Position numbers and translations under genes: made by a program
Shown: positions 50,701 through 53,700 of the stretch, piece after piece
Layout: every line of letters starts with the position of its first letter
How positions within the stretch are numbered: position 1 is the stretch's first letter
The notes under the pieces: model-generated
What the model was told of the DNA's origin: nothing
The model's input: the letters and a program-made list of their open reading frames with translations, nothing else
The model's database searches: none
Source of the DNA: Dimorphilus gyrociliatus
Lineage: Eukaryota > Animalia > Annelida
DNA length: 64,000 nucleotides
Assembly (NCBI GenBank): GCA_904063045.1
Contig: CAJFCJ010000009.1
Span: 414,942 to 478,941 of the forward strand
Reading direction: 5' to 3'

Positions 50701-53700
50701 AGCATAAACTGCTCTGGCCAGACAAATTCTAGCTTTTTGTCCTCCACTAAGGGAAACACCTCTTTCTCCGACCAAAGTTTGATCACCTTTCTCCATTAAT
50801 TTTAAATCCATTTTCAATGCAGATACTTTTATTGCTCGATCGTATCGAATCTGATCGAAAGATTGTCCAAAAAGGATATTTTGACGAACACTTGAACTAA
50901 ATATCCATGGAACTTGAGGAACGTAAGCTATTTTTCCTTTTGATTTAACATCGCCGCTGACAATGTGCATTTGATCAACCAGTGACAAGAGTAGAGACGA
51001 TTTTCCAGATCCAACTGGTCCTATAATTGCAATTAAGTCTCCCGGTTTGGCTTCAAAGCTAATATCGGATATGATAGGCATTTCATTCTAAATAAATATA
51101 TATATATATACATAAGAAAAGTTTATTTTGGACTCGGTGTTCAATAATTTACATTATCCCAAGATGCAGAAATTTTGTTCACTCTAAGACTTGGCTTGTC
51201 AGATTCACAATCTGCAGACAATGGCGGTGATGGTGGCTCAAGTTCTTCCAATAATAAAAATTCCTGCGATAAAACATATCGTAAAGATATCGTAATGAGA
51301 CTGCATAAACGAATAGGGATAAAAAATTATTTTAATCATAAGGAAAATTGAAGTATGCAACATCAACGAATGTAGAGAGCTTTTGCTTTTGTCCTAACCT
51401 TCAGACGTTCACAGGACACTCGAATATCAGCAACACAGAAAACGCAATGAACAAAACGCCTAAAGACTGTTCCACGTAGAATGTGCATTAAACTAGCCAG
51501 GGGAAAAACAATTTCCGCACGAAAAGTATATCTATCCGTTAAAAATACGCTTATCACTACTAAATAGACGAGGAGTTTAGCACCAATCGCGCTTTGGCCT
51601 TCAGAAAAAGCTTTCCATGTTTTCGACGATCTGACGAATCCTATTTCGGATCTGGAATAAAATTCACATAATCGATATCAAGAGAAATGACTCGACAGCT
51701 ACTTTTACAAGTTATCTTTCGAAGCGATATGTTAAAAAGCAATTATATAAATTACCCTAAATCAAACCTGCAAACGTCTGATCGTAATGTTAAGTTCAGA
51801 AAAGCCTACACAAGCGGACGTAAAGAACCATCCAATGCTAACTTCTAAAAGTGATAGAAAAGTCTTTGTTGGAAACAAAAATTCACTTTGCATTAATTTC
51901 TTAGTCTCAACAATCGAGCAAAGGATAATTAAAGCTACCATAAATGATCCCATTTCATCAGAAATTCCTCCTTCTAAGCTATATATAATTCCCTGTATCT
52001 TTACGAATTTTAATTCTTCTCTGGAAGAGATGATAATGATGAAAAGTGAATAATTTAAAATTGTTTTAACGAAATTAGCTTTGTAAATAGTGAATAATTT
52101 GTTGTGATTTAAAAAGCAAAAGCTCATGAAAATATAAAATAAAATCAACTTTTCGCTGTTTGAATATGTGTTTAATGATACCTAAATTCTATTGATAGAA
52201 ATTCTTAATATTACAATAGGCGATTGGTTATTGGAATCCTCTAACGACAAAAAGAAGGATTTCAACCAAAATTTTGATCAAATCAGTAAAAAGTTCATTC
52301 CGCTTCGTGACTACCCTTTTCCAAGTTGATCTTAGAATCTTCCAGAATGTAATAAAACTAAAGTCAAAATAGTAGATATCGATACCCCTCCCGAGCTTCT
52401 TTGAATAGTATTTGAAACTTTTAATACAAAATTTCCACCCTCCAATTTATGAGTAGTTAAAAAAGAATCGTTCATTCAAAGAAGAAAAAATAAGGCGTTA
52501 GTGAAGTGGGGATTTGGAAGCAAAGCGGGCAATGAAAGAAAAAAAATTACTGTTTTGCATACTTCAACTCTCAGAATATTCTTTAAAGTTGTCTACCTGA
52601 ATTCTTCGCAAAGATAAAAGACTTTCACTTCCATAAGTAATTGCCAATGGAATGAACAGACAGAGTGTCAGTCTTAGCGCATCAAATATTCCAAGAGCCA
52701 TAAATATATTACTAGCTTTTAATTGAATGCCAGATAGGCTCATAGTTGAGACAGTAAAAAATAATACGAGTTTTACAGAGGCAAAAAATGGAGCAAGTAT
52801 AAGTGCTCGAAACGATCCACTTACACTAACTCGTTTAATTTCCAAGCTGAAGTAAATTCAATATTCTGGATCATCAAATTATGACTTAAATTGGCCTACA
52901 AAGACTTTTTCTTAATCCTTTTTTTTTCACCATACTAAAAACCTATTAAGTAACAAAACTACAGTACAATAATATTAAATTGTATGGTTATAAAGCCAGC
53001 GTAATAGATCGTATAGAAGCAAATTAATCAGTAATATCGGTAAGCTAATAGATCAATTATTATAATATTAATTAGATATATAATGTTTAATATGTATACT
53101 ATACATGCAACATAGATTTGTCTATTATTTTTCTTTTACTTTTATTGTATTTATTTGAAATATAGTAATTTGTACTTATATAGAATTATAATATCTAGAA
53201 TAAATGATAAAATTAACCGAGAATTTAGTTGTTTACCCTAAGAAATAAGAAATTACGATAATTTTCTAAAATCAAACCAATAGTTCGCTGTTAATAATTA
53301 TTAAAAGATAGTTTAAGAAAAATAATAAACTTTTTAACTTTTAGATATACATAGCATACGCTATGCATACAATATTTATCAATATACTATATTAGGAGAG
53401 AATCTCTTTATATTAGCTTTTTTTATTCTAATTACAATTCTTTAATTTACTAAGAGATTTAAGACTAACTAAAATAATAAAATTGCTTGCTATGCTCTAA
53501 TAAATAATCAATTAGGGTGAAAAATTATAGAATAACTTACTTTCGAACTTTCGTAACCAATTCAGCGAATAATTTCTCCCAACAATAAGTTTTTATAACT
53601 CGTATTCCCGTGATAATTTCGTTCATTAAACGAACTCGAGAATCAGTTTGGGTAGCAGTTTTTCTCCTATATTATATTTTCATGAAGAATATTAAAGAAT

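What the first reader, a model, noticed from the sequence alone, without database searches (positions are those of the whole stretch)
51399..52846. Three-way mutually exclusive TM5-TM6 exon cluster in ABCC4 (a substrate-pocket switch)
Between the constitutive exons ending at 53541 (phase 2) and starting at 51263 (phase 0) lie three homologous but highly diverged exons: A 52846-52597 (250 nt), B 52020-51768 (253 nt) and C 51651-51399 (253 nt). Each has a good AG/GT, an open frame and identical phases. All lengths are 1 mod 3, so including none, two or three of them frameshifts; only single inclusion is productive. They encode TM5-TM6 of TMD1, which lines the substrate cavity (human ABCC4 TM6 residues such as Phe368 affect specificity). 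The chemistry differs sharply: A is canonical (RLTLCLFIP), B adds acidic residues ([14 protein letters not shown]) and C is basic/His-rich ([15 protein letters not shown]). Variable TM exons are known in long-type MRP1 genes of Drosophila and C. elegans. Here the device sits in a short ABCC4-type gene, which suggests convergent evolution in another lineage (inference).
Basis: partly seen in the sequence, partly recalled or inferred. Interest (0 to 1): 0.88.

Follow-up and report, generated by a model that had tools for sequence, protein, structure and literature searches.

The report
Swappable pocket section in a transporter gene
This small-genome animal's ABCC4-type export pump gene holds three very different versions of the section that lines its cargo pocket; RNA data show two of them used one at a time, and a related species keeps all three, so one gene probably makes pumps with different cargo preferences.

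Summary
On the minus strand, exons A (52597-52846, 250 nt), B (51768-52020, 253 nt) and C (51399-51651, 253 nt) lie between constitutive exons ending at 53541 and starting at 51263. Each has AG/GT and is open only in the required phase.

Spliced contigs of one public run join 53541 to A and to C, and join A and C to 51263. No contig joins two cassettes. A and C are therefore real mutually exclusive exons, and C is at least as abundant as A. No junction to B was seen.

A syntenic locus from a related species keeps all three exons with the same lengths and splice sites. dN/dS is 0.14 for A, 0.19 for B and 0.06 for C, so B is not a decaying pseudo-exon.

The annelid Ridgeia piscesae has a two-exon version, so the cluster is older than this species.

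Five residues that line the human ABCC4 pocket are F,R,L,L,F in A, S,E,V,W,F in B and S,R,G,R,R in C.

Four long-range RNA pairings are conserved between the two species. They suggest a switch driven by competing RNA structures.

This is a new member of a known kind: tandem mutually exclusive exons are already described for MRP1-type genes. Three-way use and any change in substrate are untested. The scan noted the RNA pairings separately (s1-080332).

The parts
53541..53666 (-). Upstream constitutive exon. It ends in phase 2 ('AA' plus the first base of the cassette).
   Evidence: Spliced contigs give joints 53667-53731 and 53540 downwards. Translation is ...[20 protein letters not shown].
52597..52846 (-). 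Cassette A (type I, canonical TM5b-TM6), 250 nt.
   Evidence: Matches human ABCC4 residues 306-387, E 2.8e-11. Joints 53541>52846 and 52597>51263 are present in run X1. dN/dS is 0.14 against L001.
51768..52020 (-). Cassette B (type II, acidic variant), 253 nt. Conserved, but no splice junction was seen.
   Evidence: Open frame with AG/GT. The orthologue in L001 (10015-10267) has the same length and splice sites, 75% amino-acid identity and dN/dS 0.19; neutrality is rejected at p = 1e-5. RNA covers it only as part of an unspliced contig.
51399..51651 (-). Cassette C (type II, basic variant), 253 nt. It is used in mRNA.
   Evidence: Joints 53541>51651 and 51399>51263 are present in X1. It is 95% identical in amino acids and 89% in nucleotides to L001, with dN/dS 0.06.
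51153..51263 (-). Downstream constitutive exon, phase 0 ([11 protein letters not shown]...).
   Evidence: The motif FLLLEEL is conserved in Ridgeia.
52555..52572 (-). S1 5' arm (the 'selector'), 25-42 nt downstream of the A donor. Its core GTTGAAGTATGCA is also the 3' arm of S4.
   Evidence: It pairs with 51343-51360, dG -25.6 in the window and -25.5 in L001. The 13-14 nt core is identical inside an otherwise unalignable intron.
51343..51360 (-). S1 3' arm (a 'docking' site) in the intron between C and the downstream exon.
52112..52125 (-). S2 5' arm, 92-105 nt upstream of the B acceptor (GAGCTTTTGCTTTT).
   Evidence: Perfect 14-bp complement of 51377-51390. L001 has 15 perfect base pairs here, 16 with a G-U end pair.
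51377..51390 (-). S2 3' arm, 9-22 nt downstream of the C donor.
   Evidence: The 24 nt after the C donor are identical in both species.
51767..51781 (-). S3 5' arm: the last 14 nt of exon B plus the first base of its donor.
   Evidence: 15-bp helix with 51401-51415, dG -27.6 in the window and -31.4 in L001. One G-U pair becomes A-U in L001.
51401..51415 (-). S3 3' arm, near the 3' end of exon C.
52844..52854 (-). S4 5' arm: the acceptor of exon A (TACTTCAG|CTT). It can pair with 52560-52570, which is part of the S1 selector.
   Evidence: 11-12 bp including 2 G-U pairs, present in both species. This is the weakest of the four pairings.
52847..52942 (-). Extension of A from a cryptic upstream acceptor (ag at 52944-52943). 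It runs into TGA after 5 codons.
   Evidence: Joint 53541>52942 is seen in X1 at a depth like that of the canonical acceptor. The site is not conserved in L001.
55591..55663 (-). Coding part of the first exon (ATG at about 55663). It is spliced to 54692.
   Evidence: The loose end of an X1 contig maps to 55591. Translation is [29 protein letters not shown].

Best explanation
An ABCC4/MRP4-type export pump gene carries a cluster of three tandemly duplicated, very diverged exons. Each encodes the outer half of TM5, the short outside loop and TM6 of the first membrane domain.

Shown:
- Exactly one cassette can be kept without breaking the frame.
- A and C are each spliced to both flanking exons, and no contig splices two cassettes to each other.
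- All three cassettes are kept under purifying selection in a related species.
- A type I plus type II pair exists at the same place in the annelid Ridgeia.

Inferred:
- The isoforms differ in substrate preference, because the cassette supplies five residues that line the human ABCC4 pocket. A keeps all five (F,R,L,L,F). C turns the hydrophobic L367/F368 positions into Arg-Arg. B reverses the R362 charge to Glu.
- The choice is set by competing RNA structures. A selector just after the A donor pairs with a docking site after C (S1). S1 is reinforced by S2, which sits next to the C donor. Together they loop out B and C and bring the A donor close to the downstream acceptor.
- Alternatively the same selector pairs with A's own acceptor (S4), which would mask A and leave C.
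- A third helix (S3) buries the B donor against the end of exon C. That would keep B silent by default.
- Double inclusions would be frameshifted and probably degraded.
For: - Anatomy and open frames.
- RNA: run X1 contigs are 99-100% identical to the window and are spliced. Joints are 53541>52846 (depth 152), 53541>51651 (100), 52597>51263 (231) and 51399>51263 (341). No A>B, B>C or A>C joint is listed.
- Related species L001 is syntenic (UAA transporter, SCP2, ETF, ABCC4, WLS). Its cassettes are 250/253/253 nt with AG/GT kept.
- Amino-acid identity to L001 is 81% (A), 75% (B) and 95% (C). dN/dS is 0.14, 0.19 and 0.06. Neutrality is rejected at p = 1e-8, 1e-5 and 2e-9.
- The cassettes are more conserved at the nucleotide level (0.79-0.89) than constitutive exons (about 0.74-0.76).
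- Ridgeia has R1 at 7907-8159 and R2 at 10000-10249, between the same flanking exons.
- Type II and type I are homologous: hhalign 96%, E 2.9e-9. They are separated on the tree with support 97/99.
- Pocket residues F324, R362, L363, L367 and F368 come from 10.1101/2022.12.22.521501 and PMC11948813. They were mapped through the ungapped alignments.
- Of about 22 stems of 11 bp or more per species, four are shared between the two species. Their arms are islands of identity in diverged introns.
Against: - No junction to B was found in the only informative run. Contigs can drop rare variants, so this is weak evidence of absence.
- Only one RNA data set, of unknown tissue or stage, was available.
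- Junction depths do not add up. C has 341 on its donor side but about 100 spliced plus 109 unspliced on its acceptor side.
- An unspliced contig, 51622-52625 at depth 109, spans from A's donor to C's acceptor. A sizeable share of the RNA may therefore be unproductive or nuclear.
- The RNA-structure model rests on two species with almost no covariation: one G-U to A-U change. S4 is short and may be a by-product of the shared TACTTCA motif.
- The pocket mapping for B and C rests on an alignment at about 17% identity.
- The Ridgeia type II exon evolves fast against its nearest relative (dN/dS 0.55), and its expression was not tested.
Confidence: 0.75

Rival explanations
1. The cluster is effectively two-way (A or C). 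B is a relic that is no longer spliced into mRNA. Its conservation would reflect RNA-level roles, for example as the partner of helix S3, rather than a protein isoform.
For: There are no B junctions in X1, although the gene is deeply covered and B lies in an unspliced contig of depth 109. The B donor is buried in a conserved 15-bp helix.
Against: Selection on B is of the protein-coding kind. About 25 synonymous against 25 non-synonymous differences fall on 55 against 197 sites (pN/pS 0.27, p = 1e-5). The frame is open although only 4.6% of random substitution sets of that size keep it open. Length, AG and GT are kept. An RNA-only constraint would not spare synonymous changes across the whole exon.
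Confidence: 0.2
2. B, or the cryptic extension of A, acts as a 'poison' element. Inclusion next to another cassette, or use of the upstream acceptor, creates a premature stop and lowers transporter output. The locus would then regulate the amount of transporter rather than its kind.
For: The cryptic acceptor at 52942 is used at a depth like the canonical one and gives TGA after 5 codons. The retained A-to-C stretch also ends the frame.
Against: The cryptic acceptor is not conserved in L001. C replaces A in frame and is the best conserved coding piece of the region. dN/dS well below 1 in B shows that B is translated.
Confidence: 0.1
3. The pattern is an artefact: collapsed paralogues, a mis-assembly, or contigs of genomic DNA mistaken for RNA.
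For: The kind of run X1 is only guessed ('?'), and part of the region is covered by an unspliced contig.
Against: X1 contigs skip 13 GT..AG introns and leave the intron at 53020-53381 uncovered. An independent assembly of another species has the same three exons in the same order. A second RNA run, X2, shows the same constitutive splices.
Confidence: 0.02

Closest known systems
Tandem mutually exclusive exon arrays of MRP1/ABCC1-type genes, such as Drosophila MRP/CG6214 with an 8-exon cluster. Arrays are reported in several phyla and were analysed by Yue et al. 2017, RNA Biol 14:1399, as summarised in PMC6071210.
   Same: ABCC-family transporter. Tandem duplicated exons of equal length and phase are used one at a time. 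The docking site lies in the intron downstream of the cluster, and conserved intronic pairings are proposed to guide the choice (PMC6071210).
   Different: This is the short ABCC4-type paralogue, without TMD0. There are only three cassettes, far more diverged (about 17% identity). The pairings found here are partly nested rather than all competing for one site. I could not read Yue et al., so I cannot say whether they also listed ABCC4-type genes or which helices their arrays encode.
Human ABCC4/MRP4 (cryo-EM structures such as 8bjf and 8sx7)
   Same: Exon A aligns without gaps to residues 306-387 and keeps F324, R362, L363, L367 and F368. NBD1 matches at 3e-89.
   Different: My searches of the held papers found no such cassette choice described for ABCC4/MRP4. 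B and C have no detectable match to any solved structure by sequence.
Docking-site/selector control of mutually exclusive splicing (Dscam1 exon 6, 14-3-3zeta, Mhc, srp bidirectional pairings)
   Same: Conserved intronic arms loop out the unused exons. One arm has two alternative partners (S1 against S4).
   Different: No experiment supports it here and only two species were compared. One helix (S3) is exon against exon. S1 and S2 are nested and can form together.
Other cassette-type transporter genes noted in this same genome by the scan (SLC6, SLC7, SGLT, SLC26, MRP1-like TMD2, TRPV pore)
   Same: The same device: tandem alternative exons for substrate-lining helices (unchecked notes).
   Different: These are different genes. 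I did not test them.

Membership tests
Mutually exclusive exon cluster from tandem exon duplication | Adjacent exons of the same phase and near-equal length, homologous to each other | tested here: met
   250/253/253 nt, all 1 mod 3. Profile-profile homology 96%, E 2.9e-9.
Mutually exclusive exon cluster from tandem exon duplication | Each member is spliced to both flanking constitutive exons in mRNA | tested here: inconclusive
   Met for A and C, with four junction contigs in X1. No junction was found for B. Only one informative run, and contigs drop rare forms.
Mutually exclusive exon cluster from tandem exon duplication | Members are not spliced to each other in productive mRNA | tested here: met
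   No A>B, B>C or A>C joint is listed. The only link is an unspliced stretch, 51622-52625. Any double inclusion shifts the frame.
Mutually exclusive exon cluster from tandem exon duplication | All members are maintained by selection | tested here: met
   dN/dS 0.14, 0.19 and 0.06 against L001; neutrality rejected for each.
ABCC4/MRP4-type (short) ABCC transporter | No TMD0; the protein starts just before TMD1 | tested here: met
   MDEQKK...[15 protein letters not shown], with the start 14 residues before the conserved motif.
ABCC4/MRP4-type (short) ABCC transporter | Closest to ABCC4 among ABCC members | tested here: met
   NBD1 exon scores 302 bits to ABCC4 against 263 or less to other ABCC members. 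Exon A hits only ABCC4 chains. No full phylogeny was made.
ABCC4/MRP4-type (short) ABCC transporter | Two TMD-NBD halves, intact and expressed | tested here: inconclusive
   ORFs for TMD2 and NBD2 are present. Pfam ABC_membrane and ABC_tran hit the L001 orthologue. A 6-kb spliced contig exists. I did not define the last exons and the stop codon.
Docking-site/selector (competing RNA structure) control | Complementary intronic elements conserved across species | tested here: met
   S1-S4 are present in the window and in L001, with identical cores in diverged introns. Only two species were available.
Docking-site/selector (competing RNA structure) control | Selectors compete for one docking site, so that only one pairing forms | tested here: inconclusive
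   S1 and S4 share an arm and so compete. S1 and S2 use adjacent, different 3' arms and are nested, so they do not compete.
Docking-site/selector (competing RNA structure) control | Disrupting and restoring the pairing changes exon choice | not testable with these tools
   Needs minigene or genome-editing experiments.

The most novel reading that the evidence does not exclude
An old, annelid-wide 'type II' TM5-TM6 cassette gives ABCC4 a second pocket. It is marked by FP at the start of TM6 and by basic residues where human ABCC4 has L367/F368. That pocket would be chemically inverted and serve a different substrate class. In this lineage the cassette split further into a basic version (C) and an acidic version (B). 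The choice would be made by a bistable RNA switch in which one selector pairs either with exon A's own acceptor or with a docking site beyond exon C.
Probability: 0.3. Interest if true: 0.65.

Novelty: new member of a known kind. Interest (0 to 1): 0.5.

Why it matters
It would show one pump gene producing transporters whose cargo pocket differs at the residues that structural work on human ABCC4 identifies as substrate contacts. That is a natural experiment on what sets specificity in MRP4-type pumps.

The two cassettes proven in RNA share only about 17% identity, yet both are strongly conserved. Swapping them into a common scaffold gives a direct test of pocket determinants.

The conserved pairings offer a small, tractable three-exon model of splicing choice guided by RNA structure, outside arthropods.

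In practice, gene predictors split or mis-join such loci. The Ridgeia gene model is cut exactly at the second cassette, so such isoforms are probably under-annotated.

Tried and rejected
- A sequence search of solved structures found nothing ABC-like for B, for C or for the C-like P0002.
- A B+C profile scored against 1.84 billion representative proteins gave only two hits, both short exon ORFs: P0001 (B orthologue) and P0002 (C-like). No annotated full-length protein with a B- or C-like segment was found.
- A type II profile search for fragments added only P0123, a siboglinid-like R2 orthologue. A search with the R2 part of the Ridgeia protein returned only itself.
- Loci from Elysia, Rotaria and two unnamed organisms hold a single TM5-TM6 copy. 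One further locus had no DNA available.
- Whole-intron RNAduplex against shuffles was uninformative, because long inputs give giant loop-filled duplexes. A first script timed out.
- An inverted-repeat scan of Ridgeia was swamped by a TA microsatellite.
- Pairing I2, between exon C and the upstream intron, is not conserved and was dropped.
- Yue et al. 2017 is not held. Paper searches for ABCC4/MRP4 with mutually exclusive exons found nothing relevant.
- Run X2, a coral metatranscriptome, covers only constitutive exons at depth 2-6 and says nothing about the cassettes.
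Full report
**What is there**

The region lies in a compact, AT-rich (about 32% G+C), gene-dense stretch. 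The gene runs on the minus strand.

- The upstream constitutive exon ends at 53541 with '...GTTCGAAA|gtaagt', in phase 2.
- The downstream exon starts at 51263 after 'atcgcag|', in phase 0.
- Between them lie exon A (52597-52846, 250 nt), exon B (51768-52020, 253 nt) and exon C (51399-51651, 253 nt).
- Each has a pyrimidine-rich tract with AG in front and GT behind.
- Each has no stop in the frame set by the upstream exon, against 6-9 stops in each of the other two frames.
- With the local intron composition an open 84-codon frame has P about 8e-4. None of 1269 intron windows of that size is open.
- An HMM built from the cassettes finds these three copies in the window and no fourth.
- All three lengths are 1 mod 3, so only single inclusion joins phase 2 to phase 0.

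**The gene**

- The first coding exon ends at 55591 and is spliced to 54692. A loose end of an RNA contig located it.
- The protein starts [35 protein letters not shown], directly before the first membrane domain and without a TMD0.
- The large NBD1 exon (50128-51081) matches ABCC4 structures at 3e-89 (302 bits). The next ABCC members score 263 bits or less.
- Exon A matches only ABCC4 chains. It aligns without a gap to human residues 306-387 (2.8e-11).

It is therefore a short, ABCC4/MRP4-type pump.

**Are B and C homologous to A?**

- Pairwise similarity is weak: 17% identity. The shuffle z-score is 8.4 for B-C but only 3.0 for A-B and 2.6 for A-C (identities).
- B and C find nothing ABC-like among solved structures.
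- With orthologues added, a type II profile (B, C and their relatives) aligns to a type I profile (A, its orthologue, Ridgeia R1, Elysia) over all 84 columns. Probability is 96% and E is 2.9e-9.

They are very diverged tandem duplicates, not unrelated exons.

**RNA evidence**

Both run searches and the single read-laying run were used.

Run X1 (coded organism A, 2017) is listed with unknown kind. Its contigs are 99-100% identical to the window and skip 13 GT..AG introns. They leave the intron at 53020-53381 uncovered. I therefore read it as a transcriptome of the same species.

| Joint | Meaning | Depth |
|---|---|---|
| 53541>52846 | upstream exon to A | 152 |
| 53541>51651 | upstream exon to C | 100 |
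| 52597>51263 | A to downstream exon | 231 |
| 51399>51263 | C to downstream exon | 341 |

- No joint links A to B, B to C or A to C. A and C are therefore used one at a time, and the very diverged C is at least as common as the canonical A.
- No joint touches B (52020 or 51768).
- B is covered only by a contig colinear with the genome (51622-52625, depth 109). That contig runs from the A donor through B to the C acceptor.
- Contigs drop rare variants, and this is a single data set of unknown stage. Absence of B is therefore weak evidence.
- Depths are assembler word depths and do not balance exactly. I use them only as rough ratios.
- A cryptic acceptor at 52942 is used about as often as the canonical A acceptor and meets TGA after five codons. 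It is not conserved.
- Run X2, a coral metatranscriptome, holds 95-99% similar spliced transcripts, but only of constitutive exons.

**Comparative evidence**

The B+C profile was scored against 1.84 billion representative proteins. It returned two short ORFs.

P0001 is an exon B orthologue. Its 24-kb contig (L001) is syntenic with the window: UAA-type transporter, SCP2, ETF, ABCC4, WLS.

L001 holds all three cassettes with identical lengths (250/253/253) and intact AG/GT.

| Cassette | Amino-acid identity to L001 | dN/dS (Nei-Gojobori) | p for neutrality (binomial test) |
|---|---|---|---|
| A | 81% | 0.14 | 1e-8 |
| B | 75% | 0.19 | 1e-5 |
| C | 95% | 0.06 | 2e-9 |

- Constitutive exons are about 74-76% identical in nucleotides, with saturated synonymous sites.
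- Random substitutions at B's level of divergence would keep its frame open in only 4.6% of trials.
- The cassettes are more conserved at the nucleotide level (0.79-0.89) than constitutive exons. Exon C has a low dS (0.5). This fits extra RNA-level constraints.
- L002 is the same species as L001, 100% identical. Only two species could be compared.

**Age of the cluster**

- The nearest named homologue of the NBD1 exon is from the annelid Ridgeia piscesae (61%), then the mollusc Elysia (54%).
- The Ridgeia locus (L004) has, between the same two flanking exons, a type I exon (R1, 7907-8159, 253 nt) and a type II exon (R2, 10000-10249, 250 nt).
- The deposited Ridgeia gene model is cut in two exactly there, and protein P0004 starts inside R2.
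- An R2 orthologue (P0123) lies on a short metagenome contig. Its frame and splice sites are kept, but dN/dS is 0.55.
- P0002, from an unrelated metagenome scaffold, is 40% identical to C.
- B, C, R2 and P0002 share 'FP' at the start of TM6.
- C has R-R, R2 has R-K and P0002 has S-R where type I has L-F or L-L.
- On a tree of the cassettes, type I and type II are separated with support 97/99. Long branches make this only suggestive.
- Elysia, a rotifer and two unnamed organisms have a single copy.

The type I/type II pair therefore predates the split between the window's lineage and siboglinid annelids. B and C split later. The window's species is probably an annelid or a close spiralian relative. 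I could not name it.

**What the cassette changes**

Structural papers on human ABCC4 place F324 (TM5) and L363, L367 and F368 (TM6) in the hydrophobic face of the pocket. R362 lies in a second anion site. Mutating F324, L363, L367 or F368 affects transport (10.1101/2022.12.22.521501; PMC11948813).

| Human ABCC4 residue | A | B | C |
|---|---|---|---|
| F324 | F | S | S |
| R362 | R | E | R |
| L363 | L | V | G |
| L367 | L | W | R |
| F368 | F | F | R |

- The mapping uses the alignments, which have no gap within TM6.
- The B and C residues at these positions are identical in L001.
- Net charge of the cassette is +5 for A, -2 for B and +6 for C, and C also has two His.
- A changed substrate range is the natural inference. 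It is untested, and the mapping for B and C rests on a low-identity alignment.

**How the choice may be made**

The frame rule makes double inclusion unproductive. Beyond that, about 22 helices of 11 bp or more can be drawn in this region in each species, and four are shared between the window and L001.

| Helix | 5' arm | 3' arm | dG, window / L001 |
|---|---|---|---|
| S1 | 52555-52572, just after the A donor | 51343-51360, intron after C | -25.6 / -25.5 |
| S2 | 52112-52125, upstream of B | 51377-51390, 9-22 nt after the C donor | -20.2 / -24.2 |
| S3 | 51767-51781, last 14 nt of B plus the first base of its donor | 51401-51415, end of exon C | -27.6 / -31.4 |
| S4 | 52844-52854, the A acceptor | 52560-52570, part of the S1 selector | not computed |

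- S2 is a perfect 14-bp complement in the window. L001 has 15 perfect base pairs, 16 with a G-U end pair.
- S3 has one G-U pair that becomes A-U in L001.
- S4 is 11-12 bp including 2 G-U pairs.
- The arms of S1 and S2 are 13-14-nt identical cores in introns that otherwise do not align.

My model is inferred, not shown:

1. S1 plus S2 loop out B and C, crowd the C donor and bring the A donor close to the downstream acceptor. This would give the A isoform.
2. If the selector pairs with A's own acceptor instead (S4), A is masked and C is used.
3. S3 keeps the B donor buried, which would explain why B is silent in bulk RNA. B would then need a factor or condition that opens S3.

The retained A-to-C RNA is compatible with a block on splicing between the A donor and the inner acceptors.

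The scan had noted nested pairings here separately (s1-080332). I found the same arms with the repeat finder and added the cross-species test.

**Comparison with what is known, and novelty**

- Tandem mutually exclusive exon arrays with docking sites downstream of the cluster are described for MRP1-type genes. A phylogenetic study reported independent duplications in several phyla (Yue et al. 2017, as summarised in PMC6071210). The paper itself is not held.
- From memory, and unverified, that study includes annelids.
- My searches of the held library found no description of such a cluster in ABCC4/MRP4.
- The same genome carries many similar cassette notes in other transporter genes, including an MRP1-like one (unchecked).

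I file this as a new member of a known kind. It is an ABCC4-type example with unusually diverged cassettes, direct RNA support for two of them and selection support for all three.

**Verdict**

A/C exclusivity and coding selection on all three cassettes are shown. Use of B, the pocket switch and the RNA switch are inferences with clear tests.

Noticed in passing
window 52847-52942 (minus strand): A cryptic acceptor 96 nt upstream of exon A is used at about the same contig depth as the canonical one (156 against 152). It gives a stop after five codons. The site is absent in the related species.
   Followed up: partly
window 51622-52625: An RNA contig colinear with the genome (depth 109) runs from the end of exon A through exon B to the start of exon C. 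The flanking introns are cleanly removed. It may be retained or slowly spliced RNA, or an antisense transcript; contigs carry no strand.
   Followed up: no
L004 5958-20171 (Ridgeia piscesae, GCA_025642075.2) and L005 1189-16472 (Elysia marginata): The deposited gene models are both cut in two just before NBD1. In Ridgeia the cut falls exactly at the second (type II) cassette, so tandem cassettes seem to break automatic annotation. Elysia has only one copy, so its cut has another cause.
   Followed up: partly
L003 238-480 (ENA metagenome scaffold, 553 nt): An exon-like ORF is 40% identical to cassette C and shares its H, R-G and basic TM6 residues. It ends in ...KRAQ|gt. The organism is unknown and the contig is too short to show neighbours.
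   Followed up: partly
window 49400-54650, run X2: A coral metatranscriptome holds spliced transcripts 95-99% identical to this gene. A close relative of the window's animal therefore lives in that coral sample.
   Followed up: no
window 51399-51651 and flanks 51372-51398, 51652-51680: Exon C and about 25 nt of intron on each side are far more conserved at the nucleotide level (0.89; flanks nearly identical) than constitutive exons (about 0.74-0.76). dS is about 0.5, against saturation elsewhere.
   Followed up: partly
window 37811-39481 (-), 43837-44517 (-), 56221-56647 (+), 57445-57630 (-), 58816-60387 (+): The neighbouring genes look like a PKD2-type channel (single 556-aa ORF), a Wntless-like membrane protein, ETF, SCP2 and a UAA/SLC35B-type transporter (single 523-aa ORF). 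The ETF, SCP2, UAA-transporter and WLS neighbours lie in the same order around the ABCC4 gene in L001.
   Followed up: no
window 51081-51121: A TA-rich simple repeat lies in the short intron before the NBD1 exon. The read tool skipped it as a repeat, so that intron's borders are not confirmed by RNA.
   Followed up: no
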